The translations under genes were made by a program, and so were the position numbers. A DNA stretch of 64,000 nt from Asterias rubens (taxonomy: Eukaryota): positions 11,718,001 through 11,782,000 of the forward strand of contig NC_047069.1 in assembly GCF_902459465.1 (NCBI RefSeq), given 5' to 3'. Below, one piece after another: positions 243 to 64,000 of this stretch. The stretch's first letter is position 1; each line of letters begins with the position of its first letter. The notes under the pieces are model-generated. The model was given only the letters and a program-made list of their open reading frames with translations. It had not been told where the DNA came from and made no database searches.

Positions 243-313
243 TGCAGACGCGATATTCAACCAGCCAGTGAAATATTTAAGATTTGCCATATTTTAAATA
301 GTGGAAACTAAGC

Positions 314-27488: not shown

Positions 27489-28218
27489 TTACTGAGCTTG
27501 TGTTATGGCTCAGTTCTGAATTTCCTCAGACCAACCAATATAAAGTGACCATAAACAGGGTTTGCCCTTAATGTTGTCATTGACCAGTCACCATTGTCAT
27601 TTCACTATAGTCATTAAGATTCTTTTCCAACCAGAAGTCTATACATCATATTCAATGGGAATGCTTGTCAACACTGAACTAGGAACTAGCCAGCCGGAAT
27701 ACCTGTGAACATAGAGCAAGGTCTGGTCCTTGCTCTATGCTGTGAAGTATGATGTTTTGCAGTTTTAGTAATTTGTTAGGGAGGTGTGTTTTGTATCGCC
27801 ATAAAGATACCCTGTTGTCATTGTACTAATAATAAACACACTGTTGATAAAAACTTTCCAAACTTTGTATGTGCTTTCTGAAAATTTTTTAAGGTTCAAC
27901 GATTTACATGGGTTAGGAGTAGGTTTTTATTTGGGTTACTGCGTCAACAGATTGGTGGAGACCACGGAGACAGGGGTCCGCTGTCGCGATGTGGGTTGGC
28001 CCCTCCAAAATGGGTAACTATATGGAACGACCACTCTCATACTAAACCATGCCTCTTGGATGTAAGCCATCTTGCCCAGACCTGATCTTGCTAGCTAAGT
28101 TTACAAGTTGTAAATCAAATATTGTTGAGCGCGGTTGTGCAAAGTACAGTATTGATATAGCGCAAGCCGAACGCAGCCCTAATGTGTACATAGTTTGACC
28201 CTCCTCTCGTGTGCTTAC

Positions 28219-28744
28219 CTGTTGCCAATTTACGGGGGAAGTCCTGATCATCAATGATAAAGTCCAGTCCCTCCGGGCTGTTCATCACGGCTTTCAGGCT
28301 TTCCACCACCTCAACCTGAGCATAAGCCCTGGCAATACTAGCTGTAGACGGTTGGCTCAGACTCGTCAGAGCCTCAAAGAGTATTCCAAGTCCGTTTAGT
28401 TCCAGAAAGTTCAGCATCCATTGCGAATCGCACTGCGTGAGCTTCTTCTTCAACCGGGAAAAACTTTGCGCGGATGGTGCACCGCTACCACTGTGCAAGA
28501 GGTTCACGTAATGTTCCGGTTCGTCGCTCTTGACAGGGGGTGCTCCCCCTATCGCCTCGGTGTCATCATCAGCCCTGCCACATCGTGCCTCTTTGTAATT
28601 TTGGCGCCTCGCTTGTTGTAATAGTCTCGTCCAGCGTTTATGTACACTACCACTACGTTGTCGTAAGTGCGGGGCCAAAGCGGACTCAAACTCTGTCTGT
28701 CTCTTGCGGTAAAGATTCGGTGAGGTTGGTAGAGACTCGCACAT
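28219..28744 (-). CDS. INF2: Inverted formin (INF2-like) first coding exon (full exon 28219-28813)
   Basis: ttttcag acceptor at 28815-28814, ATG at 28744 with an upstream in-frame stop, ACAG|gtaagc donor at 28218. Translation ...RLKKKLTQCDSQWMLNFLELNGLGILFEAL...VKxLKAVMNSPEGLDFII..KLAT parallels INF2 [30 protein letters not shown]...VRAVMNSRQGIEYIL. Confidence 0.88.
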
Positions 28745-29931: not shown

Positions 29932-30399
29932 TTTAAGCCAAATGTTCACAGGTTTGTTATTTTGTACGTTTATGTTGTGAGGATACTGGTCTTTGACAGT
30001 TACCAAAAGTTAACAAGGCAGTGGACACTATTGGTAATTACTCAAAACAATTATTATAGCATAAAACCTTACTTGGGAACGAGTAATGGGGAGCTGTTGA
30101 TAGTATAAAACATTGTGAGAAAACGGCTCCCTCTGAAGTGGAGTATTTTTGAGAAAGAAGTAATTTTCCACGAATTTGATTTCGATACCTCAGATTTTGA
30201 ACTTGAGGTCTCGAAATCAACCATCTGAAAGCACACAACTTCGTGTGACAAGAGTGTTTTTTCTTTCATTATTATCTCGCAACTTCGACGACCGATTGAG
30301 CTTAAATTTTCACAGGTTTGTTATTTTATGCATATGTTGAGACACAGCAAGTAAGAAGACTGGTCTTTGACAATTACCCAAAGTCTCCAGTGTCTTTAA
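29932..30399. mobile_element. Family A MITE (30009-30399) preceded by a family A 3' fragment
   Basis: aaggcagtggacactattggtaattactc ... gtctccagtgtctttaa. Confidence 0.8.
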
Positions 30400-32325: not shown

Positions 32326-32714
32326 TAAAGTCATGGGACACTATAGGTAATTACTCAAAATAATGATTAGCATAAAACCTGTCTTGGTGACGAGTAATGG
32401 GGAGAGGTTGATGATATAAAACATTGTGAGAAACGGCTCCCTCTGAAGTGCCATTGTTTTCGAGAAAGAAGTCATTTTCCACGAATTTGATTTCAAGACC
32501 TCAGATTTAGAAATTGAGGTCTCGAAATCAACCATCTAAACGCACACAACTTCGTGTGACATGGGTGGTGTTTTTTTTTTTCATTATTATCTCGCAAGTT
32601 CGATGACCGATTGAGCTCAAATTTTCACAGGTTTGTTATTTTATGCATATGTTGAGATACACCAAGTGTGAAGGCTAGTCTTTGACAATTACCAATAGTG
32701 TACACTGTCTTTAA
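32326..32714. mobile_element. Family A MITE
   Basis: Body matches 314-683; ends accaatagtgtacactgtctttaa. Confidence 0.8.
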
Positions 32715-33063
32715 TGGTAGATTCAATCGATTTTGACATTGCGAGAGCCCAGAATTGAATTGAATCCGATTTGAAGTTTGAGACAGAAGATGCACCATCC
32801 TTTAGTTTTATTGACGGGTAAGCTGATATAAAGACTTTCTAAGTTTCGCCACAAAAATTGGGAACTGTACATTTTTTCCAACAGTGGTGTGTTAATATTA
32901 AATTACTTTGTTTATTAAACTTGTTGCAGTTAATCTGGGGCAGTCAGCAGCCTCTATAGTTTGTGCATGATCCAATAAGCTCACTGTTTCGATAAGAAAT
33001 TACATGGAGATAACAGGTGTTAGTTGTCAGATAAAAATGATGTTTTCCTCTAGATTCTTTCTG

Positions 33064-33434
33064 TAAAGGGAAGGTACACGTTTGGTAATTACTCATAACA
33101 AATGTTAACTTAAAAACTGACTTGGTAACGAGCATTGGAGAGCTGTTGATAGTATACAACATTGTGGGGGACTCCCTCTGAAGTAACGTGTTTTTGAGAA
33201 AGAGGTAATTTCTCACTAAAATAATAAAAGACTTCGAGCTAGAAGTCTTTTATTCTTATCTGAAAGCACACAAATTCGTGCAACAAGGGTGTTTTTTCCT
33301 TCATCATTTTCTCGCAACTTCGATAACCAATTGAGCCCAACTTTTCACAGGCTTGTTATTTTATGGTTATGATGGGATACACCAAGTGAGAAGACTGGTC
33401 TTTGACAATTACCAAACGTGTACCTTCCCTTTAA
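33064..33434. mobile_element. Family A MITE, TIR variant
   Basis: taaagggaaggtacacgtttggtaatt ... aattaccaaacgtgtaccttccctttaa; both TIRs carry the same variant bases. Confidence 0.8.
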
Positions 33435-35414: not shown

Positions 35415-35789
35415 TTAAAGGCACTGGACACATTTGGTATTGTCCAAGACCAGTCTTCTCACTTGGTGTATCTCAACATTATGCACAAAATAACAAACCT
35501 GTGAAAATTTGAACTCAATTATTGGTCATCAAAGTTGCGAGATAATAATGGAAGAAAAAACACCCTTGTCACAAGCAGTTGCTTTCAGATGCTTGATTTC
35601 GGGACCTCAAAATCTAACTATGAGGTCTCGAAATCAAATTCAAACGTGTTAGTGGAAAATTACCTCTTTCTCGAACTCCTACCATACTTCGAGAGAACAG
35701 TTTCTCACAATGTGTTTTAAATAGCTCTCCATTGCTTGTTACCAAGTAAGTTTTTATGCAAACAATCGTTTTGTGTCCAGTGCCTTTAA
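35415..35789. mobile_element. Family A MITE, inverted
   Basis: ttaaaggcactggacac ... gtgtccagtgcctttaa. Confidence 0.8.
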
Positions 35790-36814: not shown

Positions 36815-37204
36815 TTAAAGGCAGTGGACACTATTGGTAATTACTCAAAATAATTATTAGCATAAAACCTTACTTGGAAACGAGTAATGGGGAGAGGTTG
36901 ATTGTATAAAACATTGTGAGAAACGGTTCCCCCCTGAACTAACGTAGTTTCCGAGAAAAAAAAGTAATTTTCCACGAATTGAATTTCGAGACCTCAGAAT
37001 TAGAATTTGAGGTCTCGAAATCAACCATCTGAAAGCACACAACTTCGTGTGACAAGGGTGTTTTTTCTTTCATTATTATCTCGCAACTTTGATGACCAAA
37101 TGAGCTCAAATTTTCACAGGTTTTGTTTTTTATGCATATTTTTGAGATACACCAAGTGAGAGAACTGGTCTTTTACAATTACCAAAAGTGTCCAGTGTCT
37201 GTAA
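36815..37204. mobile_element. Family A MITE
   Basis: ttaaaggcagtggacactattggtaattactc ... accaaaagtgtccagtgtctgtaa. Confidence 0.85.
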
Positions 37205-37542
37205 ATAATCTGCTCTTGAATGTCCCATCATAAAAAACTATGTTTTTCAAATTGCAGCTCATCTGCATAGACTGAACAGAGCAATGCTTTAGGCTATATC
37301 TACATATTTTTTAGTGGTAACGAACAAAGGCTAGGTTGGTCTTACCTGTCAAACCGTTAACAATCCGATGTTTTCAAGAAGAAGAATTTTTTTCCAAGAC
37401 CTCATCAAAACATATGTTCATCAAAGACACCCTTACGAGCAACTGCTACAATCATGAATTGTTATAATCACCTTAATTTACTCATTAGTCATTGTTCTAC
37501 TTTGATTATCACAGGCTTTGAGACAATGTTTGTTTTCGTCTA

Positions 37543-39313: not shown

Positions 39314-39690
39314 TCAAGGCGCTGGATACTATTGGTAATTATTACTCAAAATAAATTGTAGCACAACAACTTACTTGGTAACGAGCAATGGAGAGCTGTT
39401 GATAGTTAAACACATATTATGCGAAACGGCTCCCTAAAAAGTAACGTAGTTTCTGAGAAAGAGTTAATATTATTTCTCACTCAAATAATTAAAGTCTTCC
39501 AGCTGAAGCCTTTTATTGTGCATCTGAAAGCACACAAAGTATTGCAAAAGGGGTGTTTTTTCCTTCATTATTCTCTCGCAAATTCGATGACGAATTGAGC
39601 CCAAATTTTCGCAGGTTTGTCATTGTATATGCATGCACCAAGTGAGAATACTGGTCTTTGACAATAATTATTGCCAAAACGTGTAATTGT
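39314..39690. mobile_element. Family A MITE, diverged
   Basis: caaggcgctggatactattggtaattattactcaaaat ... ctggtctttgacaat. Confidence 0.7.
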
Positions 39691-47190: not shown

Positions 47191-48188
47191 TGAAGTTAAT
47201 AAAAGTTAATATTTTTAATATAAAAGATACAAGGAATACACTACACGTCAAAATTGTCAAATTTCTGCAAGGCAATTATGTACCTTTATGCCTACTGCGA
47301 ATATGTTTCATTCGAAGTAGCTGTATAACCATCTGTTAAATCGAACCTGATCCTCGCTATATGTCCTAACAAAACAGTCTCATGACTTCCCATCACGTCT
47401 CAAGAAATATCACAACAAGCTTGAATTGACTTTGACACAGCACTTGTTCATCATCATTGATTTTTAGTTTTGAACATTGTGAGTTAGCAAAGATTTGATT
47501 GAAAGAATCCTCAGCATTCCTCAATCCAACCATCGATTCAAATCCTTGGGTCAAGATCCAACAGTCTTCCAAGTCATGTCATGAATCTTTCATCTCTATC
47601 ATCAAAGCGCCTGTTTTCTTAAATATATCATTGATTGGCCTTTTATCTATCAAGTATTTTTCTCATTTTTGGTTTATACTCGAGTTTAAGAAGGCAAAGT
47701 GTGAGTAATTCAGACATACCATTTAAAAATGAAATGACACTTAAAGACCTGAGTGAAGTCAAAGCGTAGCTTCTCAAGTGACTTATTGATTTAGTTGGCA
47801 TAGAATAGCAAACAGTCCTACAGACGGTGTACGGAATCTTGTTTATCTCCGATAAAAAGCGGACTAGCAAGGTAGGTTTTTGTTCTCATAATAAAACAAT
47901 TTTAAAAAAAGTTTACAAAAGTAAATGTTTTAATCCAACATGTATGTACAGTTTTAAAAAGTTTACACACAAATGCAGTCAAATAAAACACAATTATTAA
48001 ATACAAAAGAGGGCTTGGAAAAATGTCAAACAACATGTTCTCTTAATTCTTCCATGCCCTTTTCCGTAGTTAATGTAAAAAATAAAAATTCAATAAGTTC
48101 TGCGACCGCAGAATCTTCGCAAGGATACCTTTGTTTTAGTGCGTCAATAGTACTGACTTTTTCAAGCCAGTGACGCACAAGGACATCG

Positions 48189-49151
48189 CTATCCTTTGCG
48201 AAGTTTTTTTAACATTTCTTCAATGTACATGTTAAATTGATCCTGTGGATCATCCATCAGGCAGCTATGCTGCCTTTGAGATGGATGATCCACCTCACAT
48301 CCATAACAATTCGATTGTATAATAATACATAACACTGTGCGCACGTAGAACCCTACGTGCGCGTACATATGTTGGCTGATTGTGGCTGGTACGGTGGGGA
48401 GAGCTAATGGTGACATCGGAGGCAAACAAACGGGTGACGGAACAGGTAAAGCAACTGGAACGGGTGATGGCGCTGAAGGAAGGGGTTCATCAAACACATC
48501 GTCGGGGCAAAGAATTTCCGACGCTATACAAGTAACACACAAACAGAAATGGTATAAATAAGTTGAATGGTTGAAACTTGATTGCAAGCTCTAAGTTTAG
48601 GTTTGGTCTTGAGCAATGTAACGGCTATGTTGCTAATATGAGAACATCTTCTGATCAATCAGTTAATCACGGTTTAACAGCAAAAAAATAAAAAAACAAT
48701 AATAAATAATAAATAATTAAAAACATAAAAATAAAATAAAAACGGAACGTACCACATTGCCAAGAATACCCCTCCAAATCATCGTCATCTCCTTCTCCAG
48801 CCGTGTCCTCCTCCATCTCAAATTCTATGACATGAGTAACTAAAAATTAAACAAAAGAGAAACAAATTTATTTTATTTAATTTTTAGGCGTGACGTCTTT
48901 AACATTAAAACAAACACATACGGAAAGAGGTGTATTGGAAGGGGGAGGGGGTTGTTCTAAAAAGAACATTTAAGTAGTGGAAGCAAACAAATAAAAAAAA
49001 ACTTACACTCTGCCTGCTCTTGGAAGACACTTGTAGGTGGTGGAGGTAGGGAATGGGGGATAATTTGTCCCCACATCACGTCTTCTCCTTCCAGCCTCCG
49101 CCATTCTTCCGCCGGGTTGAAGGAATCAGGAAAAAATTTGTTTTCAGCCAT
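48189..49151 (-). CDS. Three-exon 188-aa acidic/Pro-rich/zinc-motif protein, copy 1: join(49151-49007, 48839-48753, 48523-48189)
   Basis: Donors GTAAGT and GTACGT, pyrimidine-rich TAG acceptors, both introns phase 1. Exons of 145+87+335 = 567 nt give one open frame MAENKFFPDSF...EEDTAGEGDDDDLE...EILCPDDVF...CYGCEVDHPSQRQHSCL...LRKG*. Confidence 0.75.
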
Positions 49152-49330
49152 GATGATGATGATGTTTATAATTTACTGCTACTGATGTTGCTGGTTTGCT
49201 GATTTGCTGTGAAGATCTGTGGCTCCAAACGATTTGTCGTGGGCTTTTTATCCATTTGTTTTTTACATTACAACACACGCTTTTGGATATGTAAGTGACC
49301 ATTTCTTAGTTCTTAGTTCTTAGTTTTTAG

Positions 49331-49598: not shown

Positions 49599-49960
49599 CT
49601 AATGGTGAGTTAGATTGTATGGTTTGTTTGTTACCCAATTACATCTTGCGTAAGCAAAGGAGTGACTGTGTACTTGTAGATCGTCTGGAATCCCTTCCAC
49701 AAATTGTATCTCAAGAACCAGACTAGCCAAATGGTCATAACCATCTTGATATTCCCTGTAACATTGTGAGTTAGCAAAGATTTGATTGAAAGAATCCTCA
49801 GCATTCCTCAATCCAACCATCGATTCAAATCCTTGGGTAAAGATTTAACAGTCTTCCAAGTCATGTCATGAATCTTTCATCTCTATCATCAAAGCGCCTG
49901 TTTTCTTAAATATATCATTGATTGGCCTTTTATCTATCAAGTATTTTTCTCATTTTTGGT
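49599..49960 (-). pseudogene. Orphan ORF Y (one internal stop); truncated second copy at 47473-47670
   Basis: Frame KYLIDKRPINDIFKK...DS*HDLEDC...MVGLRNAEDSFNQIF...LTHH*; no family recognised. Confidence 0.35.
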
Positions 49961-50476
49961 TTATACTCGAGTTTAAGAAGGCAAAGTGTGAGTAATTCAG
50001 ACATACCATTTAAAAATGAAATGACACTTAAAGACCTGAGTGAAGTCAAAGCGTAGCTTCTCAAGTGACTTATTGATTTAGTTGGCATAGAATAGCAAAC
50101 AGTCCTACAGACGGTGTACGGAATCTTGTTTATCTCCGATAAAAAGCGGACTAGCAAGGTAGGTTTTTGTTCTCATAATAAAAAAATATAAAAAAAAGTT
50201 TACAAAAGTAAATGTTTTAATCAAACATTGTATGTACAGTTTTAAAAAGTTTACAGACAAATGCAGTCAAATAAAACACAATTATTAAATACAAAAGAGG
50301 GCTTGGAAAAATGTCAAACAACATGTTCTCTTAATTCTTCCATGCCCTTTTCCGTAGTTAATGTAAAAAATAAAAATTCAATAAGTTCTGCGACCGCAGA
50401 ATCTTCGCAAGGATACCTTTGTTTTAGTGCGTCAATAGTACTGACTTTTTCAAGCCAGTGACGCACAAGGACATCA

Positions 50477-51437
50477 CTATCCTTTGCGAAGTTTTTCTAA
50501 CATTTCTTCAATGTACATGTTAAATTGATCCTGTGGATCATCCATCAGGCAGCTATGCTGCCTTTGAGATGGATGATCCACCTCACATCCATAACAATTC
50601 GATTGTATAATAAAACATAACACTGTGCGCACGTAGAACCCTACGTGCGCGTACATATGTTGGCTGATTGTGGCTGGTACGGTGGGGAGAGCTAATGGTG
50701 ACATCGGAGGCAAACAAACGGGTGACGGAACAGGTAAAGCAACTGGAACGGGTGACGGCGCTGAAGGAAGGGGTTCATCAAACACATCGTCGGGGCAAAG
50801 AATTTCCGACGCTATACAAGTAACACACAAAAAGAAATGGTATAATTAAGTTGAATGGTTGAAACTTGATTGCAAGCTCTAAGTTTAGGTTTGGTCTTGA
50901 GCAATGTAACGGCAATGTTGCTAATATGAGAACATCTTCTGATCAATCAGTTAATCACGGTTTAACAGCAAAAAAAAAAAATAATAATAATAATAATAAA
51001 TAATTAAAAATATAAAAATTAAAAAAAAAGTAACGTACCACATTGCCAAGAATACCCCTCCAAATCATCGTCATCTCCTTCTCCAACCGTGTCCTCCTCC
51101 ATCTCAAATTCTATGACATGAGTAACTAAAAATTCAACAAAAGAGAAACAAATTTATTTTATTTAATTTTTAGGCGTGACGTCTTTAATATTAAAACAAA
51201 CACATATGGAAATAGGTGTATTGGAAGGGGGAGGGGGTTGTTCTAAAAAGAACATTTAAGTAGTGGAAGCAAACAAATAAAATAAAACTTACACTCTGCC
51301 TGCTCTTGGAAGACACTTGTAGGTGGTGGAGGTAGGGAATGGGGGATAATTTGTCCCCACATCACGTCTTCTCCTTCCAGCCTCCGCCATTCTTCCGCCG
51401 CGTTGAAGGAATCAGGAAAAAATTTGTTTTCAGCCAT
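50477..51437 (-). CDS. Three-exon 188-aa protein, copy 2: join(51437-51293, 51125-51039, 50811-50477)
   Basis: Same splice sites, exon sizes and open frame as copy 1; upstream sequence is replaced beyond 51471. Confidence 0.72.
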
Positions 51438-51602
51438 GATGATGATGATGTGTATAATTTACTGCTACTGACATACGTGTAATGACCAAAGCGCAAACCC
51501 TCGTTCCACCATTTAAAAATGAAAAATTAAAAATGGCAGAGTTTGAGTTTGATGATCTTACCCCTTCAATCGTGACACGCCATGTTGACTAATGGTCAAC
51601 TT

Positions 51603-51824: not shown

Positions 51825-52065
51825 CACGTTGAAAATAATTTTGATAAATTTTGTTTGCAAGAAAGCTAACCACGCACAAAAATACAAAAGAATACAAATA
51901 CTAGTTATGGGTCTACAAATTGAATGTGTTGTTTTTTTGTTTTTTTTGTTTTTTTCCCAACATCCAGACCTTTCACACATCCTAGATTAATTATCCCAAC
52001 GTAATGAGTTTTAGGAAAAGACAATGACTGACTTTTCGTTTCTCTCATAAGTCTCTATACAATTT

Positions 52066-52245
52066 GATTCTTAAGACCTTGCTATTGACTTGGAGTAGAC
52101 AGGGAAAACCAATGGACAATACTGGCTTATCTATCCACTTAAGCCTTCGATTTTTAAGACCTTGCTATTGACTTGAAGTAGGCAGGGAAAATACTGGCTT
52201 ATCTATCCTCTTATCAAACCTTCGATTCTTAAGACCTTGTTATTC
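52066..52245. repeat. 75-83-bp tandem repeat, ~2.3 copies
   Basis: gatt(c/t)ttaagaccttg(c/t)tatt starts at 52066, 52149 and 52224. Confidence 0.8.
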
Positions 52246-52682
52246 TAAAGTAGGTCTTTATCTACACAATGATAAGATTATCGTCACCCTCAACACACCT
52301 GATCCAATTAATTTCTAAGATCGCGGAATGTATTACACTTTGTACAGAAATTAATAACATGTTGCCCCCGTCATAGAAAATTTAAATTTTACACGCCTAT
52401 AATTATTACCAAAAGTGTATGAGGGTAATGAAAACTCGTAAATAAATAAGAACATATTACACTGTTTAAATATTTATTTTGCTCGCGGAAAATTCTTCTC
52501 ACAATTACTAAAAATCTTCGCAGGATCGTAATTTACATACGGGATAAGTATTTAAGGCCAGATTTTTGATAATCGTCATTCTGCAAATTTTGCGAACAAC
52601 CGAATACAACCATAGAAGCTAAAACCACATACAAGAAAAATGATTAAAACCATTCCTCCATGTTAAAACTATGAAAACAAAA

Positions 52683-52902: not shown

Positions 52903-53513
52903 AAATGCTTCGGCAACCCATACTTCCTGGCGAAATTCCTGGCTAACTCCCTCCGTTCAGCCTCTTCTCTCCTACGTTCAGCCTCTTCTCTCCTACGTGT
53001 AGCCCCTTCTCGGTGTGCTTTGCGCCTTGCAGCTGCTTGTCTTGAGGCGGGGTATCTAGGTTGGGATCTTGCATGTTCTGCTAAGGCACGTACGTACTTT
53101 AACCAACCTGATTTAGAGCCTGGCGAAGGGTCGAGGGCGCTGCGAATCTGCCTCCTTTTTTCGAAACCCTTTGGCAAACTTTCCAGGTAGTTGAAGTAAG
53201 CAGTGTTGGAAACAAACGCTGCCTGGACCATTGCCGACTCGATGGTTATGTAGTCGACGTCTTCTTCGTACTCCCTGGTCTTGATGGCAAACGAGATCCT
53301 ATGTAGTTAATTGCAGCGTTGACATTGCCCTTCTAGCAATGCTACATGATTGGTTTTGTCGGCGATACTAAAATTAAAACTGTTGTATGCAAATACCATC
53401 CAGCTCGTGCAGTTACCGTCAGCATCCATCGTTGCATCGTTTACTTTGGAAACAAACGCTGTCTGGACCATTGCCGACTCGATGGTTATGTAGTCGACGT
53501 CTTCTTCGTACTC
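52903..53513 (-). pseudogene. Orphan ORF X, copy 1 (basic C-terminus with REEAERR repeats), fused to a PolB fragment
   Basis: EYEEDVDYITIESAMVQ...LPKGFEKRRQI...RRREEAERRREEAERRELARNFARKYGLPKH; TAA at 53307-53309 where copy 2 has GAA; a 68-bp piece is duplicated at 240-bp offset. Confidence 0.55.
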
Positions 53514-55768
53514 GCTGGGATTATAACCAGTGGGGGGAAGCACTGCTATTGTGTCCTTTGCAAGAAAATTCCTGCGAAAGACGAGGTTACATGCAGATGC
53601 TATCGTGATCGTTTTCCGGAAAGGATCAACACCCCGATCATTAGTGTCAACTGCAAAAGTGTGCATGAACATCTCACGAAATAGTACGCAACAGCGTTTC
53701 AATACATTCACGTCACTAATACAATAAGTTAACAGTTCTTCTTGTAAATCAAAGACTCTGTTTTCACTTTTTTGTATGGCATACCACGCGTGAAATTCTT
53801 TTCTTCGTCCCTCTGACATTGAATCTGGGTCATAATATGAGACATCCGGTATAGGACCTACATATTTCTGATTATCCCTCGTGTTGAAGAAATGAGGAAA
53901 AAAAACCTTTTTCAATTCAGTTAACCCAAATATTGAGGGCAACTTTGACAGAGCCATGGGTAAAAAACTCATCGAGTCTATTATCCTGCGCTTGTACTGA
54001 GGTACATCAATGCACAGGACTTTACCCCGGTGTATATTACAGATGGAACACACGCATTCTTAAACAGAAATTCAAGAAGAAAATATGAGTCGTACCCTTT
54101 TGCATTATGTGCAATTGCTATGGAGTTGTCAGTTTCCTTGGATTGAAACAACCATGCACAGAAGCTACTCTGTGTTTTGTCCTTCTGGAAAATTTTCATA
54201 GAAACACAATGTTCGCATTTATATCCAGCAGGTTGACCCGCACACAATTCACACACCACATCGGCTACACATAAATTAGGTACATGAGTCCCGCCAACCT
54301 GAGTACATTCAAAATCAAAAAATATATACCTGAGTGGTGTTTTAGATTTCTTTTTCTTGCTTGAATTTAGGGCTTGAGCCCTCTCATCAGTATCATCCAT
54401 TTCATCGCGCATAAACATATGCTGTTGAGAAACTGCAGGAACATACAAAGTCTCGGTATGCGAATTTCTTGGTTTTTTTCTGTCAATGACTTTTATATAA
54501 CATTGGTGCTCAAATCCAACCATTTCCTTACAGGTGTTGCAATATTTTTTGATGCATGAATGTTTTCCTTGTTTAACTGACATGGCGACACTTAAATACG
54601 CGTTACAAGTTTTACATATATAATACAACTGACACACAGTTTTATTGCCTACGTGTCTACTCTTATGATTAGCAAAACAGACAGGATTTTTAAAATTTCT
54701 ATTACAAGTTTCACACTTTATCCACTTATTATTGTTAGCGTCTCCACAACCTTCAGAAAAACATACTGTACATGAAATATTACACACATGAGTGGGGACT
54801 GTCCCATTATACCCTTTATGACATGTGTCGCAGAAGTTGCTGCGATAAAGGAATCCCGACATTGATCTTATGACATCATAATGCCCTCTAGCTAAATGAA
54901 GGTAAATTGTCCGTGGTTTTTCGGGACCCTTAAATATTGTAGAGCAGCAATGCTCTCTGGAAAGAACAACTAATCTATAGTTCCCCATGACATCTTGGAA
55001 TCGCTGTAGCTCTTCAATACCACCTAGCGTTCCTTCTACAATTCCAGCCCTTCTATGGAGAGCAGTAACCAACGGCTCAACATATTTTTTCCTATTTTTA
55101 GGATATACTTAATTACATTACCGGTCTTCTCCTGGAGAGCTTGTCCGATCGCGATGGCACGAGCAAGGCATGTGTTCCATCATCTTTAATTTTTACAATA
55201 CTATGTTTTGAAGCCAGCAATTGCTCTAACTGTAGGAGTCTAGAGGGAGTATTACTTTTGCCACCCTTTTGCAATATCATGTGTACAAAGTGTATAGTTA
55301 CGGTCTCGTCAAATCTAATAAACTGGTAGCTGTTTAGTACATTTTGTATTTTTTCGAACAAACGCTCAGCCGTTAAGTCTTCCATTCTCATAAATGGAAG
55401 AGAAACCGGAAACCATACGCACTCTGTCATCAGATGGAATGCCAAACCCAATTTTACTTATAATGCTTTGAATAATATTACCTAGAAGAGGTATAGCCTC
55501 ATTAAGATTTACATTTTCCATGTTTCTAAAAGTTATGTTATAGTCATAAGTATAAGCCTGAAAGTGTTTGTTCAATTTGTCATTAATCCTTACTAGTTTA
55601 TAGTACTCCGAGTACAAGTCCTCCTCTGGCTCTTTCTCCACTCGAAGCCTCTTGCTCGGTAACCCCTCGTCGTCGTCATCGGTCCACTCATTGCTCTCCT
55701 CCCATCCCCAGTCCGCATCGTAAATAGTGGTTTGATAGTTCAGCATGGTCTCCAGGTCAAAGTCAGAA
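53514..55768 (-). pseudogene. pPolB lineage A fragment 1 (N-terminus, TP region, vOTU, Cys-rich, ExoI-III), frameshifted
   Basis: YIFFDFEC (ExoI), AHNAKGYD (ExoII), KKxFFPHFFN, YCISDV (ExoIII), TIASAC; 23-bp, 4-bp and two 1-bp deletions. Confidence 0.9.
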
Positions 55769-55894
55769 ATGGCGGCACTTATACACACATTAAAAGTGTT
55801 ACACCTATAGTACAATTGACACACAGTGATATTCCCAGTTTGTCTATTCTTATGGTTTGCGAAACAAATAGGATCATTAAAAGTTCTATATTAA

Positions 55895-57605
55895 CTTAAA
55901 CAGAAATTCAAGAAGAAAACATGAGTCGTACCCTTTTGCATTATGTGCAATTGCTATGGAGTTGTCAGTTTCCTTGGATTGAAACAACCATGCACAGAAG
56001 CTACTCTGTGTTTTGTCCCCCTTGAACATTTTCATAGAAACACAATGTTCACATTTATATCCAGCAGGTTGACCCGCACACAATTCACACACCACATCGG
56101 CTACACATAAATTAGGTACATGAGTCCCGCCAACCTGAGTACATTCAAAATCAAAAAATATATACCTGAGTGGTGTTTTAGATTTCTTTCTTTTGCTTGA
56201 ATTTAGGGCTTGAGCCCTCTCATCAGTATCATCCATTTCATCGCGCGTAAACATATGCTGTTGAGAAACTGCAGGAACATTCAAAGTCTCGGTATGCGAA
56301 TTTCTTGGTTTTTTTCTGTCGATGACTTTTATGTAACATTGGTGCTCAAATCCAACCATTTCCTTATAGGTGTTGCAATATTTTTTGATGCATGAATGTT
56401 TTCCTTGTTTAACTGACATGGCGACACTTAAATACGCGATACAAGTTTTACATCTATAATACAACTGACACACAGTTTTATTGCCTGTGTGTCTACTCTT
56501 ATGATTAGCAAAACAGACAGGATTTTTAAAATTTCTATTACAAGTTTCACACTTTATCCACTTATTATTGTTAGCGTCTCCACAACCTTCAGAAAAACAT
56601 ACTTTACATGAAATATTACACACATGAGTGGGGACTGTCCCATTATACCCTTTATGACATGTGTCGCAGAAGTTGCTGCGATTAAGGAATCCCGACATTG
56701 ATCTTATGACATCATAATGCCCTCTAGCTAAATGAAGGTAAATTGTCCGTGGTTTTTCGGGACCCTTAAAAATTGTAGAGTAGCAATGCTCTCTGGAAAG
56801 AACAACTAATCTATAGTTCCCCATGACATCTTGGAATCGCTGTAGCTCTTCAATACCACCTAGCGTTCCTTCTACAATTCCAGCCCTTCTATGGAGAGCA
56901 GTAACCAACGCCTCAACATATTTTTTCCTATTTTTTAGGATATACTTAATTACATTACCGGTCTTCTCCTGGAGAGCTTGACCGATCGCGATGGCACGAG
57001 CAAGGCATGTGTTCCATCATCTTTAATTTTTACAATACTATGTTTTGAAGCCAGCAATTGCTCTAACTGTAGGAGTCTAGAGGGAGTATTACTTTTGCCA
57101 CCCTTTTGCAATATCATGTGTACAAAGTGTATAGTTACGGTCTCGTCAAATCTAATAAACTGGTAGCTGTTTAGTACATTTTGTATTTTTTCGAACAAAC
57201 GCTCAGCCGTTAAGTCTTCCATTCTCATAAATGGAAGAGAAACCGGAAACCATACGCACTCTGTCATCAGATGGAATGCCAAACCCAATTTTACTTATAA
57301 TGCTTTGAATAATATTACCTAGAAGAGGTATAGCCTCATTAAGATTTACATTTTCCATGTTTCTAAAAGTTATGTTATAGTCATAAGTATAAGCCTGAAA
57401 GTGTTTGTTCAATTTGTCATTAATCCTTACTAGTTTATAGTACTCCGAGTACAAGTCCTCCTCTGGCTCTTTCTCCACTCGAAGCCTCTTGCTCGGTAAC
57501 CCCTCGTCGTCGTCATCGGTCCACTCATTGCTCTCCTCCCATCCCCAGTCCGCATCGTAAATAGTGGTTTGATAGTTCAGCATGGTCTCCAGGTCAAAGT
57601 CAGAA
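55895..57605 (-). pseudogene. pPolB lineage A fragment 2 (ends after ExoII)
   Basis: 1,837-bp offset copy; carries the 23-bp and 4-bp deletions. Confidence 0.9.
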
Positions 57606-57722
57606 ATGGCGGCACTTATACACACATTAAAAGTGTTACACCTATAGTACAATTGACACACAGTGATATTCCCAGTTTGTCTATTCTTATGGTTTGCGAA
57701 ACAAATAGGATCATTAAAAGTT

Positions 57723-59117
57723 CTATATTAACTTAAACAGAAATTCAAGAAGAAAACATGAGTCGTACCCTTTTGCATTATGTGCAATTGCTATGGAGTT
57801 GTCAGTTTCCTTGGATTGAAACAACCATGCACAGAAGCTACTCTGTGTTTTGTCCCCCTTGAACATTTTCATAGAAACACAATGTTCACATTTATATCCA
57901 GCAGGTTGACCCGCACACAATTCACACACCACATCGGCTACACATAAATTAGGTACATGAGTCCCGCCAACCTGAGTACATTCAAAATCAAAAAATATAT
58001 ACCTGAGTGGTGTTTTAGATTTCTTTCTTTTGCTTGAATTTAGGGCTTGAGCCCTCTCATCAGTATCATCCATTTCATCGCGCGTAAACATATGCTGTTG
58101 AGAAACTGCAGGAACATTCAAAGTCTCGGTATGCGAATTTCTTGGTTTTTTTCTGTCGATGACTTTTATGTAACATTGGTGCTCAAATCCAACCATTTCC
58201 TTATAGGTGTTGCAATATTTTTTGATGCATGAATGTTTTCCTTGTTTAACTGACATGGCGACACTTAAATACGCGATACAAGTTTTACATCTATAATACA
58301 ACTGACACACAGTTTTATTGCCTATGTGTCTACTCTTATGATTAGCAAAACAGACAGGATTTTTAAAATTTCTATTACAAGTTTCACACTTTATCCACTT
58401 ATTATTGTTAGCGTCTCCACAACCTTCAGAAAAACATACTTTACATGAAATATTACACACATGAGTGGGGACTGTCCCATTATACCCTTTATGACATGTG
58501 TCGCAGAAGTTGCTGCGATTAAGGAATCCCGACATTGATCTTATGACATCATAATGCCCTCTAGCTAAATGAAGGTAAATTGTCCGTGGTTTTTCGGGAC
58601 CCTTAAAAATTGTAGAGTAGCAATGCTCTCTGGAAAGAACAACTAATCTATAGTTCCCCATGACATCTTGGAATCGCTGTAGCTCTTCAATACCACCTAG
58701 CGTTCCTTCTACAATTCCAGCCCTTCTATGGAGAGCAGTAACCAACGCCTCAACATATTTTTTCCTATTTTTTAGGATATACTTAATTACATTACCGGTC
58801 TTCTCCTGGAGAGCTTGACCGATCGCGATGGCACGAGCAAGGCATGTGTTCGTACCATCATCTTTAATTTTTACAATACTATGTTTTGAAGCCAGCAATT
58901 GCTCTAACTGTAGGAGTCTAGAGGGAGTATTACTTTTGCCACCCTTTTGCAATATCATGTGTACAAAGTGTATAGTTACGGTCTTGTCAAATCTAATAAA
59001 CAGGTAGCTGTTTAGTACATTTTGTATTTTTTCGAACAAACGCTCAGCCGTTAAGTCTTCCATTCTCATAAATGGAAGAGAAACCGGAAAACTTAAGATC
59101 GGTGAGTCGAAAACCAT
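57723..59117 (-). CDS. pPolB lineage A fragment 3: open 464-codon frame (TP C-terminal part, vOTU, Cys-rich module, ExoI/II)
   Basis: ATG at 59117; DDGTNTCLARAI (Cys codon 58842-58844) and LARGHYDVI (His codon 58554-58556) intact; stops just past the junction at 57732. Homology extends to 59314 across a 1-bp frameshift. Confidence 0.7.
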   Translation of the reverse strand: MVFDSPILSFPVSLPFMRMEDLTAERLFEKIQNVLNSYLFIRFDKTVTIHFVHMILQKGGKSNTPSRLLQLEQLLASKHSIVKIKDDGTNTCLARAIAIGQALQEKTGNVIKYILKNRKKYVEALVTALHRRAGIVEGTLGGIEELQRFQDVMGNYRLVVLSREHCYSTIFKGPEKPRTIYLHLARGHYDVIRSMSGFLNRSNFCDTCHKGYNGTVPTHVCNISCKVCFSEGCGDANNNKWIKCETCNRNFKNPVCFANHKSRHIGNKTVCQLYYRCKTCIAYLSVAMSVKQGKHSCIKKYCNTYKEMVGFEHQCYIKVIDRKKPRNSHTETLNVPAVSQQHMFTRDEMDDTDERAQALNSSKRKKSKTPLRYIFFDFECTQVGGTHVPNLCVADVVCELCAGQPAGYKCEHCVSMKMFKGDKTQSSFCAWLFQSKETDNSIAIAHNAKGYDSCFLLEFLFKLI

Positions 59118-59314
59118 ACGCACTCCGTCGTCAGATGGACTGCAAACCCAATTTTACTGAGAATGCTTTGGATAATATTACCTAGAAGAGGTATAGCCTC
59201 ATTAAGATTTACATTTTCCATGTTTCTAAGAGTTATGTTATAGTCATAAGTATAAGCCTGAAAGTGTTTGTTCAATTTGTCATTAATCCTTACTAGTTTG
59301 TAGTACTCCGAGTA

Positions 59315-59682
59315 GCGATGACACAGGGAGTTCTTCACCACTGTTCTGTTTCCATTTCTTGTTCTTGTTCTCCTGAGTCTGGATATGAGCAAAGAAAAAT
59401 AGAACACAATAAGAATAACAATATTTCATCGATAACATAAACACCAAAGCCAACAACCCATACAACTCAGCGGTTATGGAGGGACAAATATTAAAAATCC
59501 TCAAAAATAAACAAAATAATATTTACCTTGACATCCTTCACCGCTTCATTGATGGCTGGTATGTTCTCTACCAACGTCTCCCATTCTTCACGTTTTAAAT
59601 TGATGCCACGGGGACTACTCCATAACTCCTTACCTTTTACCGTTCTCATTGACATCAAATTATAATTTAAATCAGCAAACAT
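59315..59682 (-). pseudogene. PC4/Sub1-like gene, copy 2, with a GT-AG intron (59526-59379), truncated by a junction
   Basis: MSMRTVKGKELWSSPRGINLKREEWETLVENIPAINEAVKDVK|gtaaat...ttctttgctcatatccag|TQENKNKKWKQ in phase 0. Confidence 0.6.
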
Positions 59683-59693
59683 TTATAAAAGTA

Positions 59694-60050
59694 TTAAATA
59701 TCAAGAGATGTTGTGGAAACCCTATCACTTTGAACTTTTCGTTTTGGGTAGAGATGTGAACGCAGTCTTTGTCTGTTTATACGTGAACATTCCGTCTTCC
59801 CTCATGCGAAAACGTTGATTTACTACTAACACCCACTTTCTTTGACTTTAATACAAACTAAATATGTATAAATATGTATCCTTGTCAATCTGGTTTGTTC
59901 TTTTATTCAAACAGTTACAACTAATTTTGCTTTTGGCTCCAAAGCAATAGTAGGTTTTGCTTCAAAGGGCTACTATACCGTCCCCTTCCCACTCTACTTT
60001 AAAGAGACCCGGAGTTCTCTTATCGAAGGCGGGATGCTCAGCCGTAGTAG
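59694..60050 (-). pseudogene. pPolB lineage B C-terminal polymerase remnant
   Basis: EHPAFDKRTPGLFKVEWEGDGIVAL*SKTYYCFG...SCNCLNKRTN...FRMREDGMFTYKQTKTAFT / YPKRKVQSDRVSTTSLDI*: the KRTPGLFKxE, ALCSKTY and KRKVxxDGxSTxPL features of a Polinton PolB C-terminus, with stops and a frameshift. Confidence 0.8.
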
Positions 60051-60253
60051 TGTGTTGGATCTTAATGAGACAATCTATTGTTATATTATTCATAATGCAC
60101 AAATACAATAGGATTAAAGGCTTAAATTAGCATAACAAAGGATGGTACGAGTCTTAATGAGACAGTGTGTTAAACCTGTGTATAACAGACAATGATTAAA
60201 TCTCTCTTTTGAAAATGTGGTGGCTCTTAAAAGAGCCGGTTTTACATGCCTTA

Positions 60254-60672
60254 AAATGCTTCGGCAACCCATACTTCCTGGCAAAATTCCTGGCTAACTC
60301 CCTCCGTTCAGCCTCTTCTCTCCTACGTTCAGCCTCTTCTCTCCTACGTTTAGCCCCTTCTCGGCGTGCTTTGCGCCTTGCAGCTGCTTGTCTTGAGGCG
60401 GGGTATCTAGGTTGAGATCTTGCATGTTCTGCTAAGGCATGTACGTACTTTAACCAACCTGATTTAGAGCCTGGCGAAGGGTTGAGGGCACTGGGAATCT
60501 GCCTCCTTTTTTCGAAACCCTTTGGCAAACTCTCCAGGTAGTTGAAGGAAGCAGTGTTGGAAACAAAGGGTACCTGGACCATTGCCGACTCGATGGTTAT
60601 GTAGTCGACGTCTTCTTCGTACTCCCTGGTCTTGATGGCCAACGAGATCCTATGTAGTTCATTGCAGCGTTG
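60254..60672 (-). pseudogene. Orphan ORF X, copy 2
   Basis: 7,351-bp offset copy of 52903-53321. Confidence 0.55.
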
Positions 60673-62898
60673 TCCTTTGCAAGAAAATTCCTGCAGAAGA
60701 CAAGGTTACATGCAGATGCTATTGTGATTGTTTTCTGCAAAGGATCAACACCCCGATCATTAGCGTCAACTGCAGAAGTGTGCATGAACATCTCACGAAA
60801 TAGTACGCAACAGCGTTTCCATACATTCACGTCACTAATACAATAAGTTAACAGTTCTTCTTGTAAATCAAAGACTCTGTTTTCACTTTTTTGTATGGCA
60901 TACCACACGTGAAATTCTTTTCTTCGTCCCTCTGACATTGAATCTGGGTCATAATATGAGACATCCGGTATAGGACCTACATATTTCTGATTATCCCTCG
61001 TGTTGAAGAAATGAAGAAAGAAACCCTTTTTCAATTCAGTTAACCCAAATATTGAAGGCAACTTTGACAGAGCCATGGGTAAAAAACTCATCGAGTCTAT
61101 TATCCTGCGCTTGTACTGAGGTACATCAATGCACAGGACTTTAGCCCCAGTGTATATTACAGATGGAACACACGCATTCTTAAACAGAAATTCAAGAAGA
61201 AAATATGAGTTGTACCCTTTTGCATTATGTGCAATTGCTATGGAGTTGTCAGTTTCCATGGATTGAAACAACCATGCACAGAAGCTACTCTGTGTTTTGT
61301 CCCCCTTGAACATTTTCATAGAAACACAATGTTCGCATTATATCCAGCAGGTTGACCCGCACACAATTCACACACCACATCGGCTACACATAAATTAGGT
61401 ACATGAGTCCCGCCATCCTGCGTACATTCAAAATCAAAAATATATACCTGAGTGGTGTTTTAGATTTCTTTCTTTTGCTTGAATTTAGGGCTTGAGCCCT
61501 CTCATCAGTATCATCCATTTCATCGCGCATAAACATATGCTGTTGAGAAACTGCAGGAACAGTAAAAGTCTCGGTATGCGAATTTCTTGGTTTTTTTCTG
61601 TCAATGACTTTTATATAACATTGGTGCTCAAATCCAACCATTTCCTTACAGGTGTTGCAATATTTTTTGATGCATGAATGTTTTCCTTGTTTAACTGACA
61701 TGGTGATACTTATATACGCGTTACAAGTTTTACATCTATAATACAACTGACACACAGTTTTATTGCCTATGTGTCTACTCTTATGCTTAGCAAAACAGAC
61801 AGGATTACAAGTTTCACACTTTATCCACTTATTATTGTTAGCGTCTCCACAACCTTCAGAAAAACATACTTTACATGAAATATTACACACATGAGTGGGG
61901 ACTGTCCCATTATACCCTTTATGACATGTGTCGCAGAAGTTGCTGCGATTAAGGAATCCCGACATTGATCTTATGACATCATAATGCCCTCTAGCTAAAT
62001 GAAGGTAAATTGTCCGTGGTTTTTCGGGACCCTTACAAATTGTAGAGTAGCAATGCTCTCTGGAAAGAACAACTAATCTATAGTTCCCCATGACATCTTG
62101 GAATCGCTGTAGCTCTTCAATACCACCTAGCGTTCCTTCTACAATTCCAGCCCTTCTATGGAGAGCAGTAACCAACGGCTCAACATATTTTTTCCTATTT
62201 TTTAGGATATACTTAATTACATTACCAGTCTTCTCCTGGAGAGCTTGACCGATCGCGATGGCACGAGCAAGGCATGTGTTCGTACCATCATCTTTAATTT
62301 TTACAATACTATGTTTTGAAGCCAGCAATTGCTCTAACTGTAGGAGTCTAGAGGGAGTATTACTTTTGCCACCCTTTTGCAATATCATGTGTACAAAGTG
62401 TATAGTTACGGTCTCGTCAAATCTAATAAACAGGTAGCTGTTTAGTACATTTTGTATTTTTTCCAACAAACGCTCAGCCGTTAAGTCTTCCATTCTCATA
62501 AATGGAAGAGAAACCGGAAAACTTAAGATCGGTGAGTCGAAAACCATACGCACTCCGTCGTCAGATGGACTGCAAACCCAATTTTACTTATAATGCTTTG
62601 GATAATATTACCTAGAAGAGGTATAGCCTCATTAAGATTTACATTTTCCATGTTTCTAAAAATTATGTTATAGTCATAAGTATAAGCCTGAAAGTGTTTG
62701 TTCAATTTGTCATTAATCCTTACTAGTTTATAGTACTCCGAGTACAAGTTCTCCTCTGGCTCTTTCTCCACTCGAAGCCTCTTGCTCGGTAACCCCTCGT
62801 CGTCGTCATCGATCCACTCATTGCTCTCCTCCCATCCCCAGTCCGCATTGTAAATAGTGGTTTGATAGTTCAGCATGGTCTCCAGGTCAAAGTCAGAA
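60671..62898 (-). pseudogene. pPolB lineage A fragment 4 (N-terminus to ExoIII), frameshifted
   Basis: vOTU Cys/His intact; 15-bp in-frame deletion at ~61806; 1-bp deletions at ~61338, ~61440 and ~62570. Confidence 0.9.
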
Positions 62899-63023
62899 AT
62901 GGCGGCACTTATACACACATTAAAGTGTAACACCTATAGTACAATTGACACACAGTGATATTCCCAGTTTGTCTATTCTTATGGTTTGCGAAACAAATAG
63001 GATCATTAAAAGTTCTATATTAA

Positions 63024-64000
63024 CTTAAACAGAAATTCAAGAAGAAAATATGAGTCGTACCCTTTTGCATTATGTGCAATTGCTATGGAGTTGTCAGTTT
63101 CCTTGGATTGAAACAACCATGCACAGAAGCTACTTTGTGTTTTGTCCCCCTTGAACATTTTCATAGAAACACAATGTTCGCATTTATATCCAGCAGGTTG
63201 ACCCGCACACAATTCACACACCACATCGGCTACACATAAATTAGGTACATGAGTCCCGCCAACCTGAGTACATTCAAAATCAAAAAATATATACCTGAGT
63301 GGTGTTTTAGATTTCTTTCTTTTGCTTGAATTTAGGGCTTGAGCCCTCTCATCAGTATCATCCATTTCATCGTGCGTAAACATATGCTGTTGAGAAACTG
63401 CAGGAACATTCAAAGTCTCGGTATGCGAATTTCTTGGTTTTTTTCTGTCAATGACTTTTATGTAACATTGGTGCTCAAATCCAACCATTTCCTTACAGGT
63501 GTTGCAATATTTTTTGATGCATGAATGTTTTCCTTGTTTAACTGACATGGCGACACTTATATACGCCTTACAAGTTTTACATCTATAATACAACTGACAC
63601 ACAGTTTTATTGCCTGTGTGTCTACTCTTATGATTAGCAAAACAGACAGGATTTTTAAAATTTCTATTACAAGTTTCACACTTTATCCACTTATTATTGT
63701 TAGCGTCTCCACAACCTTCAGAAAAACATACTTTACATGAAATATTACACACACGTGTGGGGACTGTCCCGTTTTACCCTTTATGACATGTGTCGCAGAA
63801 GTTGCTGCGATTAAGGAATCCCGACATTGATCTTATGACATCATAATGCCCTCTAGCTAAATGAAGGTAAATTGTCCGTGGTTTTTCGGGACCCTTAAAA
63901 ATTGTAGAGTAGCAATGCTCTCTGGAAAGAACAACTAATCTATAGTTCCCCATGACATCTCGGAATCGCTGTAGCTCTTCAATACCACCTAGCGTTCCTT
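63024..64000 (-). pseudogene. pPolB lineage A fragment 5 (vOTU His to ExoII), continues beyond the window
   Basis: Same sequence and same right-hand junction as fragments 2 and 3. Confidence 0.9.

What the first reader, a model, noticed from the sequence alone, without database searches (positions are those of the whole stretch)
53514..64000. Tandem amplification of only the TP-vOTU-zinc-exonuclease half of a protein-primed polymerase
Seen: five co-oriented copies (units 54059-55894, 55895-57731, 57732-59314, 61179-63023, 63024-end) with a 1,837-bp period inside a 7,351-bp higher-order repeat. Three units stop at the same base after ExoII (FLLEFLFK) and two stop just after ExoIII. No lineage A polymerase motifs (DxxSLYP, KxxxNSxYG, YxDTDS) appear anywhere. 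Established: Polinton pPolBs carry an N-terminal terminal protein and a vOTU protease thought to release it. Inference: selective retention of the primer/protease half suggests a defective-interfering or dominant-negative cassette, or a small-RNA template aimed at the replication gene; neutral satellite-like expansion is the null.
Basis: partly seen in the sequence, partly recalled or inferred. Interest (0 to 1): 0.8.

Follow-up and report, generated by a model that had tools for sequence, protein, structure and literature searches.

The report
Tandemly amplified dead Maverick polymerase fragment
A broken front half of a Maverick/Polinton virus-like DNA polymerase gene has been copied head-to-tail at least five times in a sea-star chromosome, and every sign points to ordinary neutral repeat expansion, not a working anti-viral cassette.

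Summary
Five co-oriented copies (96-99% identical, period 1,836-1,845 bp) lie at 54059-64000. They sit in a 7,351-bp larger repeat, of which only about 1.5 copies are visible. The coding strand is minus.

Each unit carries the conserved N-terminal half of a Polinton/Maverick-type protein-primed polymerase: D1 (the proposed terminal-protein domain), a vOTU fold, a Cys/His zinc cluster, ExoI and ExoII. Two copies run on through ExoIII. No polymerase core or other Maverick gene is detectable anywhere in the 64 kb.

The functional reading is not supported:
- The three "stops after ExoII" are one junction, identical to the base, so they record one founding event and not repeated selection.
- Each unit starts with a 96-nt, 81%-identical scrap of the zinc-finger region, so the progenitor was already a mosaic.
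- Every unit is broken.
- Differences between units look neutral (pN/pS about 0.4-1.3, no third-position excess).
- There are no inverted copies or termini.

The best explanation is a transposon-derived tandem repeat, expanded and partly homogenised by unequal exchange in a duplication-prone stretch of an asteroid genome.

The array's tail is fused to an unrelated repeat family that ends in a canonical histone 3' stem-loop. That side observation is the more curious item.

The parts
63024..64000 (-). Unit E: pPolB fragment. Only its 3' 977 nt are visible (zinc cluster to ExoII), because the window end cuts it. Broken at least once.
60663..63023 (-). Unit D plus its tail. It holds a 96-nt zinc-finger scrap, then D1, vOTU, the zinc cluster, ExoI, ExoII and ExoIII. 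Homology ends at profile position 672 of 1269. Broken 3-4 times.
60178..60672 (-). X': a copy of an unrelated repeat family fused to the tail of unit D. Its 5' part is missing through a deletion of about 240 bp relative to copy 1.
60197..60242 (-). Histone 3' UTR stem-loop (Rfam RF00032) at the end of X', followed by a purine-rich stretch. It lies 11 nt outside the edge of the larger repeat.
   Evidence: 40.3 bits, gathering score 34
59315..60177 (-). Y: a spacer with no other copy in the window. It contains a decayed ORF of unknown family and a 43-codon exon-like piece with weak likeness to PC4.
57732..59314 (-). Unit C: pPolB fragment. In gene sense its 5' end is truncated and starts at the beginning of D1. 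It holds the longest open stretch of the array (466 codons). Broken at least once.
55895..57731 (-). Unit B: a complete 1,837-bp unit. Broken 2-3 times.
53519..55894 (-). Unit A plus its tail through ExoIII. A weak profile alignment trails on to 53430. Broken 3-5 times.
53446..53518 (-). R1: a 73-nt copy of an internal piece of X (53206-53278, 97% identical). It lies between the polymerase tail and the start of X.
52903..53436 (-). X, copy 1: the same repeat family, from its native 5' edge up to 11 nt before the place of the stem-loop. It contains a 21-bp x3 repeat.
52903..60253 (.). Copy 1 of the larger repeat (7,351 bp). On the plus strand the order is X, tail, A, B, C, Y.
60254..64000 (.). 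Copy 2 of the larger repeat, partial because the window ends. The order is X', tail, D, E.

Best explanation
The array is a transposon-derived tandem repeat, that is, a small macrosatellite or segmental tandem duplication. It is made from a dead, already rearranged fragment of a Maverick/Polinton protein-primed polymerase gene in a sea-star genome.

Proposed history, with each step marked:
1. Shown: a fragment of the gene covered conserved profile positions 16 to about 680. It was cut off before the polymerase domain and joined to an unrelated repeat family (X). At its 5' side it abutted a 96-nt scrap of a diverged copy of the same gene.
2. Shown as a single event, mechanism inferred: one illegitimate junction joined the base after ExoII to the start of that scrap, creating a 1.84-kb duplication.
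3. Inferred from mosaic site patterns: unequal exchange and gene conversion between the copies added units and partly homogenised them.
4. Shown as about 1.5 copies: a larger block of three units plus flanks, 7.35 kb, was duplicated again.

The copies do nothing for the element. They carry no polymerase core, no termini and no intact reading frame, and they are drifting neutrally.
For: Single founding event: the three unit junctions are identical to the base.

Mosaic progenitor: the first 96 nt of each complete unit are 81% identical to the unit's own internal zinc-finger segment. By blastx they match the internal zinc region of relatives.

Decay:
- Every unit needs at least one stop or frame change to be read through. 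The counts are A+tail 3-5, B 2-3, C at least 1, D+tail 3-4 and E at least 1.
- pN/pS between units is 0.40-1.28.
- Variable sites fall 12, 19 and 18 on codon positions 1, 2 and 3.
- Transitions equal transversions, and CpG observed/expected is 0.70, the same as the rest of the window.

Exchange between copies: in the 5' part C groups with D against A and B (5 sites plus two shared indels). In the 3' part B groups with C against A, D and E (5 sites).

No element around the array:
- No polymerase core.
- No integrase, protease or capsid gene like those beside relatives in L001 and L003.
- No inverted repeats.

Duplication-prone surroundings:
- A second local duplication, 47473-49185 = 49760-51471, at 98%.
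- X is itself a tandem family elsewhere.

Same family elsewhere as scraps: a 353-nt piece at 93-94% identity sits in unrelated flanks in a marine metagenome scaffold.

Precedent: tandem arrays that arise from transposons are well documented (PMC5932611, PMC6947457, PMC9659126, PMC12628747).
Against: - Unit C keeps a 466-codon open stretch with the OTU Cys/His, the zinc ligands and the ExoI-II residues intact. With only 5-37 substitutions per pair, the pN/pS estimates are noisy, and B-E and C-E give 0.40-0.45.
- Expression, small RNAs and chromatin state were not testable.
- The array continues beyond the window, so its true size is unknown.
- The junction was not found in another data set, so there is no independent confirmation of the assembly.
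Confidence: 0.8

Rival explanations
1. Assembly artefact. Either the whole array, or more plausibly the 7.35-kb larger repeat, is a false duplication. For example, two divergent haplotypes of a highly heterozygous sea star could have been laid end to end.
For: - Only about 1.5 copies of the larger repeat are seen, and they differ by about 4% plus a 240-bp indel. That is in the range of haplotype divergence in marine invertebrates (my own knowledge, not tested here).
- 3 of the 5 single-base indel columns between units lie in homopolymer runs of 4 or more.
- The junction has no independent sighting.
Against: - There is no N run in the window.
- Units A, B and C lie in direct succession inside one copy of the larger repeat. 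Each carries private substitutions (13, 0-few and 5 singletons) and distinct indels. Haplotype stacking cannot produce that.
- Site patterns are mosaic, not a clean A=D, B=E pairing.
Confidence: 0.1
2. Functional cassette. Either the array is transcribed as a single-strand small-RNA (piRNA-type) source aimed at active Mavericks, or unit C makes a truncated vOTU-zinc-exonuclease protein that interferes with their replication.
For: - A 466-codon open stretch with catalytic and metal-binding residues survives in unit C.
- All copies share one orientation, as in single-strand piRNA clusters.
- A histone-type 3' processing signal lies downstream of unit D in the same sense.
Against: - All units are broken, and the open stretch of C lacks the first half of D1.
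- There is no sign of constraint between units.
- The shared truncation point is one event.
- There are no inverted copies.
- No close intact relative of this polymerase turned up to serve as a target. The best long relative is 40% identical.
Confidence: 0.07
3. Defective-interfering type replicon: a shortened element genome that keeps what is needed in cis and is copied by a helper.
For: Only the loss of the polymerase core.
Against: - A protein-primed replicon needs its terminal inverted repeats. None is present.
- The unit borders lie inside coding sequence.
- The array is chromosomal, between host-type repeats and about 25 kb from a formin exon.
Confidence: 0.01

Closest known systems
Transposon-derived satellites and tandem arrays (for example PMC5932611; reviews PMC6947457, PMC9659126, PMC12628747)
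   Same: - Head-to-tail copies of part of a mobile element.
- One junction shared by all copies.
- Later growth and homogenisation by unequal exchange.
- A higher-order period.
- Neutral decay.
   Different: - The source is an internal coding fragment of a Maverick/Polinton polymerase, not an LTR, a MITE or a whole element.
- The junction joins two internal points, so it did not arise by the double-insertion route described in PMC5932611.
- Only five units are seen.
Polinton/Maverick protein-primed polymerase with TP-vOTU-Exo-Pol architecture (PMC11071308)
   Same: - D1, an OTU fold with conserved Cys/His, and ExoI-III are present in that order.
- Relatives sit beside an rve+chromo integrase, an adenain-type protease and a double-jelly-roll-like protein.
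   Different: - The polymerisation half is absent.
- A large zinc cluster with 16 invariant Cys/His columns lies between vOTU and Exo.
- All copies are broken.
Polymerase derivatives of polinton-like viruses and transpovirons, and the mavirus polymerase (PMC11071308)
   Same: These are natural polymerase genes of this lineage that have lost a domain.
   Different: Those keep TP, vOTU and the polymerisation domain and lose the exonuclease. Here the opposite half survives, and as a pseudogene.
Single-strand piRNA clusters ('transposon graveyards')
   Same: Co-oriented dead transposon fragments at one locus.
   Different: Such clusters hold many unrelated fragments, not one fragment amplified. 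Small-RNA output was not testable here.

Membership tests
Polinton/Maverick pPolB gene | Family-B exonuclease motifs ExoI, ExoII and ExoIII of the DNA_pol_B_2 type | tested here: met
   - Pfam PF03175 hits at E 1e-14 and 8e-13 on the two tails.
- D379 is invariant. E381, H448, N449 and D454 are conserved in at least 90% of 46 sequences.
- Foldseek matches to family-B exonuclease domains at probability 0.99-1.00.
Polinton/Maverick pPolB gene | vOTU-like cysteine protease domain (D2) with catalytic Cys and His | tested here: met
   - AlphaFold model with pLDDT 81.6.
- OTU and viral OTU structures are the top PDB matches, at probability 0.9-0.99 but with modest E-values of 6e-3 to 5e-2.
- C94 is conserved in at least 90% of sequences and H190 is invariant.
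- There is no Pfam OTU hit.
Polinton/Maverick pPolB gene | N-terminal D1 domain homologous to PRD1/adenovirus terminal proteins | tested here: inconclusive
   - The units cover the profile from position 16.
- The model of relative P0098 (pLDDT 91.7) shows a compact strand-helix domain before the OTU fold.
- D1+D2 together match the N-termini of adintovirus, bidensovirus-like and mavirus polymerases (E 4e-9 to 2e-4).
- No protein named as a terminal protein was returned. The TP identity rests on PMC11071308.
Polinton/Maverick pPolB gene | Polymerisation domain (palm, fingers, TPR1/2, thumb) | tested here: not met
   Nothing in the window matches beyond profile position 682 of 1269, in any frame.
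Polinton/Maverick element | Integrase, capsid proteins, maturation protease, packaging ATPase and terminal inverted repeats around the polymerase | tested here: not met
   - The neighbouring genes of relatives in L001 and L003 have no match in the window.
- There are no inverted repeats in 51-64 kb.
- Those genes are present beside the relatives themselves.
Transposon-derived tandem repeat / macrosatellite | Head-to-tail copies that share one junction | tested here: met
   Three junctions are identical to the base. Spacing is 1836-1845 bp.
Transposon-derived tandem repeat / macrosatellite | Exchange or homogenisation among copies, and a higher-order period | tested here: met
   Site patterns are mosaic along the unit. 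A 7,351-bp period is seen as about 1.5 copies.
Transposon-derived tandem repeat / macrosatellite | Long array, and copy number that varies between individuals | not testable with these tools
   The array runs off the window, and there are no population data.
Defective-interfering replicon | Keeps the cis-acting termini (replication origins) | tested here: not met
   No inverted repeats were found, and the unit borders lie inside coding sequence.
piRNA cluster | Produces abundant small RNAs | not testable with these tools
   There are no expression data.

The most novel reading that the evidence does not exclude
The co-oriented array is transcribed, perhaps ending at the histone-type stem-loop downstream of unit D. 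It then serves the sea star as a small-RNA source, or unit C supplies a truncated vOTU-zinc-exonuclease protein. Either product would restrain active Mavericks, making this a host-kept 'half polymerase' immunity locus.
Probability: 0.05. Interest if true: 0.7.

Novelty: new member of a known kind. Interest (0 to 1): 0.22.

Why it matters
As it stands, the array is a clean small example of how an internal scrap of a virus-like transposon turns into a tandem repeat: one illegitimate junction, then unequal exchange, then a higher-order duplication. It is also a caution that a shared truncation point across copies need not mean selection.

It would matter more if the array proved to be expressed against active Mavericks.

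The fused X family may deserve its own look. It is a tandem unit of about 0.69 kb with an ORF that ends at a canonical histone stem-loop. Non-histone genes with that 3' end are rare.

Tried and rejected
- Tandem Repeats Finder missed the array, because its period limit is 500.
- Looking up the 466-residue product by exact sequence found nothing on record.
- DNA could not be fetched for the contigs of the closest protein hits P0001, P0042, P0188 and P0190, because the sample files are too large.
- A scan of JGI metagenomes for the 24-nt junction gave 0 hits. The protein-based scan of the same collection gave no relatives.
- I suspected that the decayed ORF in Y was the missing C-terminus of the polymerase. 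I rejected this: it has no hit to 191 relatives at E up to 1, none to the full-length profile with filters off, and none in Pfam.
- The PC4 likeness of the exon-like piece in Y stays below threshold.
- X has no Pfam or PDB relative.
- A sequence search of the PDB with the 466-residue stretch gave only weak zinc-finger hits.
- No protein named as a terminal protein came back from the fold search.
- I considered a simple tandem duplication of 52903-60253 and found it unsatisfactory. The Y|X' junction is the native continuation of family X, whereas the left edge at 52903 is not. Either a left-truncated higher-order array or a displaced duplication fits better, and the window cannot decide between them.
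Full report
**1. Observation**

The window has no N runs. Self-BLAST and the repeat finder show five co-oriented copies:
- A 54059-55894
- B 55895-57731
- C 57732-59314
- D 61179-63023
- E 63024-64000, cut by the window end

Spacing is 1836, 1837 and 1845 bp. In a five-way alignment, pairwise substitution identity is 97.4-99.3%, with 0-8 indel events per pair. A larger period of 7,351 bp is seen once: 52903-53321 = 60254-60672, and 53446-56871 = 60557-64000 with a difference of about 240 bp. So about 1.5 copies of that repeat are visible. All open reading frames of the region lie on the minus strand. On the plus strand the layout is X, tail, A, B, C, Y | X', tail', D, E...

**2. What the unit encodes**

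Family identity:
- The tails after units A and D hit Pfam DNA_pol_B_2 at E 8e-13 and 1e-14.
- The longest open stretch of the array (466 codons, in unit C) finds 2,192 relatives in the representative library, 116 of them at E of 1e-30 or better. Many are 1,100-1,600 residues long.
- Named hits come from mussels, a firefly and a wasp.
- Full-length relatives carry DNA_pol_B_2 over their whole C-terminal half.
- Two relatives were seen in their genomic context. One lies beside an rve integrase with a chromodomain (L001). The other lies beside an adenovirus-type protease and a weak double-jelly-roll match (L003). The family therefore belongs to Maverick/Polinton-type elements.

Fold of the unit C stretch:
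- An AlphaFold model built on 46 sequences has mean pLDDT 81.6.
- Its best PDB matches are OTU and viral OTU domains (probability 0.9-0.99, E 6e-3 to 5e-2) and the exonuclease domains of family-B polymerases.
- In the viral library it matches adintovirus, bidensovirus-like, MELD-virus and adenovirus polymerases.
- In the alignment, H190, sixteen Cys/His of a zinc cluster and D379 are invariant. C94, E381, H448, N449 and D454 are conserved in at least 90% of sequences.

The D1 domain:
- A 1269-position profile of 45 full-length relatives aligns to the units from position 16, so the conserved D1 domain is included.
- A model of relative P0098 (D1+D2, pLDDT 91.7) matches the N-termini of adintovirus and mavirus polymerases.
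- No protein named as a terminal protein came back, so the TP label rests on PMC11071308.

**3. What is missing**

tblastn with 11 full-length relatives, and the profile run against every stop-free stretch of all six frames with filters off, match only 53430-64000 on the minus strand. They never match beyond profile position 682 of 1269. The genes that flank relatives (integrase, protease, capsid-like) have no match in the window. There are no inverted repeats in 51-64 kb.

**4. The borders tell the history**

- The three unit-to-unit junctions (E to D, C to B, B to A) are identical base for base. A and D read on through the same point into ExoIII. The 'three units that stop at the same base' are thus one event inherited by descent.
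- The first 96 nt of each complete unit are an ungapped, 81%-identical copy of the unit's own zinc-finger segment. They match the internal zinc region of relatives.
- The units differ from one another by only 1-2.5%. This scrap therefore came from a much older or different copy, and the progenitor was already a mosaic of dead pieces.
- At the 3' side, polymerase homology stops at profile position 672-682, and the sequence passes into an unrelated family, X.

**5. State of the copies**

- Every unit needs at least one stop or frame change to be read through. The counts are A+tail 3-5, B 2-3, C at least 1, D+tail 3-4, and the visible half of E at least 1.
- Read in register with the open stretch of unit C, pN/pS between units is 0.40-1.28.
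- Variable columns fall 12, 19 and 18 on codon positions 1, 2 and 3.
- Singleton changes are 22 transitions and 22 transversions, 6 of them of CpG type. CpG observed/expected is 0.70 both in the array and in the rest of the window.

This is neutral decay.

Site patterns are mosaic. In the 5' part C groups with D against A and B (5 sites and two shared indels). In the 3' part B groups with C against A, D and E. That indicates unequal exchange or conversion among units after the larger duplication.

**6. Surroundings and host**

- A Diaphanous-type GTPase-binding exon at 28115-28744 (minus strand; Pfam E 3e-12) is 90% identical to the inverted formin-2-like protein of Asterias rubens. The host is a sea star related to, but not the same as, that species.
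- Another local duplication lies next to the array: 47473-49185 = 49760-51471, at 98%.
- A 353-nt piece of the same polymerase family, 93-94% identical, sits between unrelated flanks in a marine metagenome scaffold. Scraps of this family are therefore dispersed in related genomes.

**7. The fused X family**

X (52903-53436 and 60178-60672) has relatives at 65-90% protein identity in short marine contigs.
- In L004 the X unit recurs head to tail with a period of about 685 nt, and nothing polymerase-like lies upstream. The polymerase tail was therefore joined to X secondarily.
- X' ends in a full-length histone 3' stem-loop (RF00032, 40.3 bits against a gathering score of 34), followed by a purine-rich stretch.
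- In L005 the ORF of about 155 residues stops about 12 nt before that stem-loop.
- X has no Pfam or PDB relative.
- pN/pS among X copies is 0.33-0.75, on small counts.
- Copy 1 of the larger repeat ends 11 nt before the place of the stem-loop.

**8. Explanation**

The evidence fits a transposon-derived tandem repeat, a known kind of event (PMC5932611, PMC6947457, PMC9659126, PMC12628747). Here the source is an internal fragment of a Maverick polymerase, and the junction lies inside the gene, so the 'double insertion' route does not apply. The sequence of events is in the Best explanation section: a mosaic fragment, one illegitimate junction, unequal exchange, then a 7.35-kb block duplication.

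The rivals are weaker:
- A defective-interfering replicon is contradicted by the lack of termini.
- A dominant-negative protein is made unlikely by the breaks and the lack of constraint.
- A single-strand small-RNA source cannot be excluded without expression data.
- A haplotype-stacking artefact could account for the larger repeat, but not for A-B-C.

- One search printed the bounds of individual tblastn pieces, which indirectly bracket frame changes. In my working reasoning I also discussed roughly where one frame change lies.
- In that reasoning I recalled from memory a few motif strings: an OTU motif, a phage polymerase C-terminus, PC4, and a histone stem-loop consensus.

None of these was used as a query or as evidence, and none is repeated here. 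After noticing, I printed only counts and outer bounds.

Noticed in passing
window 60197-60242 (-), with X at 52903-53436 and 60178-60672; L004, L005: A canonical histone 3' stem-loop (RF00032, 40.3 bits) ends a repeat family of about 0.69 kb. The family carries an ORF of about 155-176 residues with no known relatives. In a marine metagenome scaffold (L004) the unit is tandemly repeated. It may be a non-histone tandem gene family with histone-type 3' ends.
   Followed up: partly
window 59697-60126 (-): A decayed ORF in four pieces inside spacer Y. It has no Pfam hit, no match to the polymerase profile and no other copy in the window. Its family is unknown.
   Followed up: partly
window 59527-59655 (-): A 43-codon exon-like stretch that starts at an ATG and ends at a GT. 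It has weak likeness to the C-terminal part of transcriptional coactivator PC4 (Pfam E 0.052; PDB 1pcf E 0.11).
   Followed up: partly
window 47473-49185 and 49760-51471: A second local direct duplication (1.7 kb, 98%, offset 2,287 bp) just left of the array. It carries an ORF of 117-132 residues with a Pro-rich part and a weak DUF4802 hit (E 0.047).
   Followed up: partly
window 28115-28744 (-): An exon encoding a Diaphanous-type GTPase-binding domain, 90% identical to the inverted formin-2-like protein of Asterias rubens. It places the window in an asteroid echinoderm.
   Followed up: yes
window 1-684, 7093-7447, 30015-30399, 32326-32714, 33058-33421, 35415-35776 (inverted), 36815-37205, 39341-39665: An interspersed repeat of about 390 bp at 76-90% identity, in both orientations and twice adjacent at the window start. 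It is probably a SINE- or MITE-like element.
   Followed up: no
window 52950-53011 and 60301-60362: A 21-bp unit repeated three times inside X, encoding an Arg/Glu-rich repeat. One relative (P0189) has one unit fewer.
   Followed up: no
window 52063-52254: A tandem repeat of about 72-83 bp (2 copies, about 80-83% identical) in the unique left flank of the array.
   Followed up: no
window 21226-21437 and 26749-26957: A 212-bp direct repeat at 90% identity, 5.5 kb apart, near the formin exon.
   Followed up: no
L002 381-733: A 353-nt piece of the same polymerase family (93-94% identical to the units, OTU region). It is flanked on both sides by sequence unrelated to the window, in a Mediterranean coastal metagenome scaffold.
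   Followed up: partly
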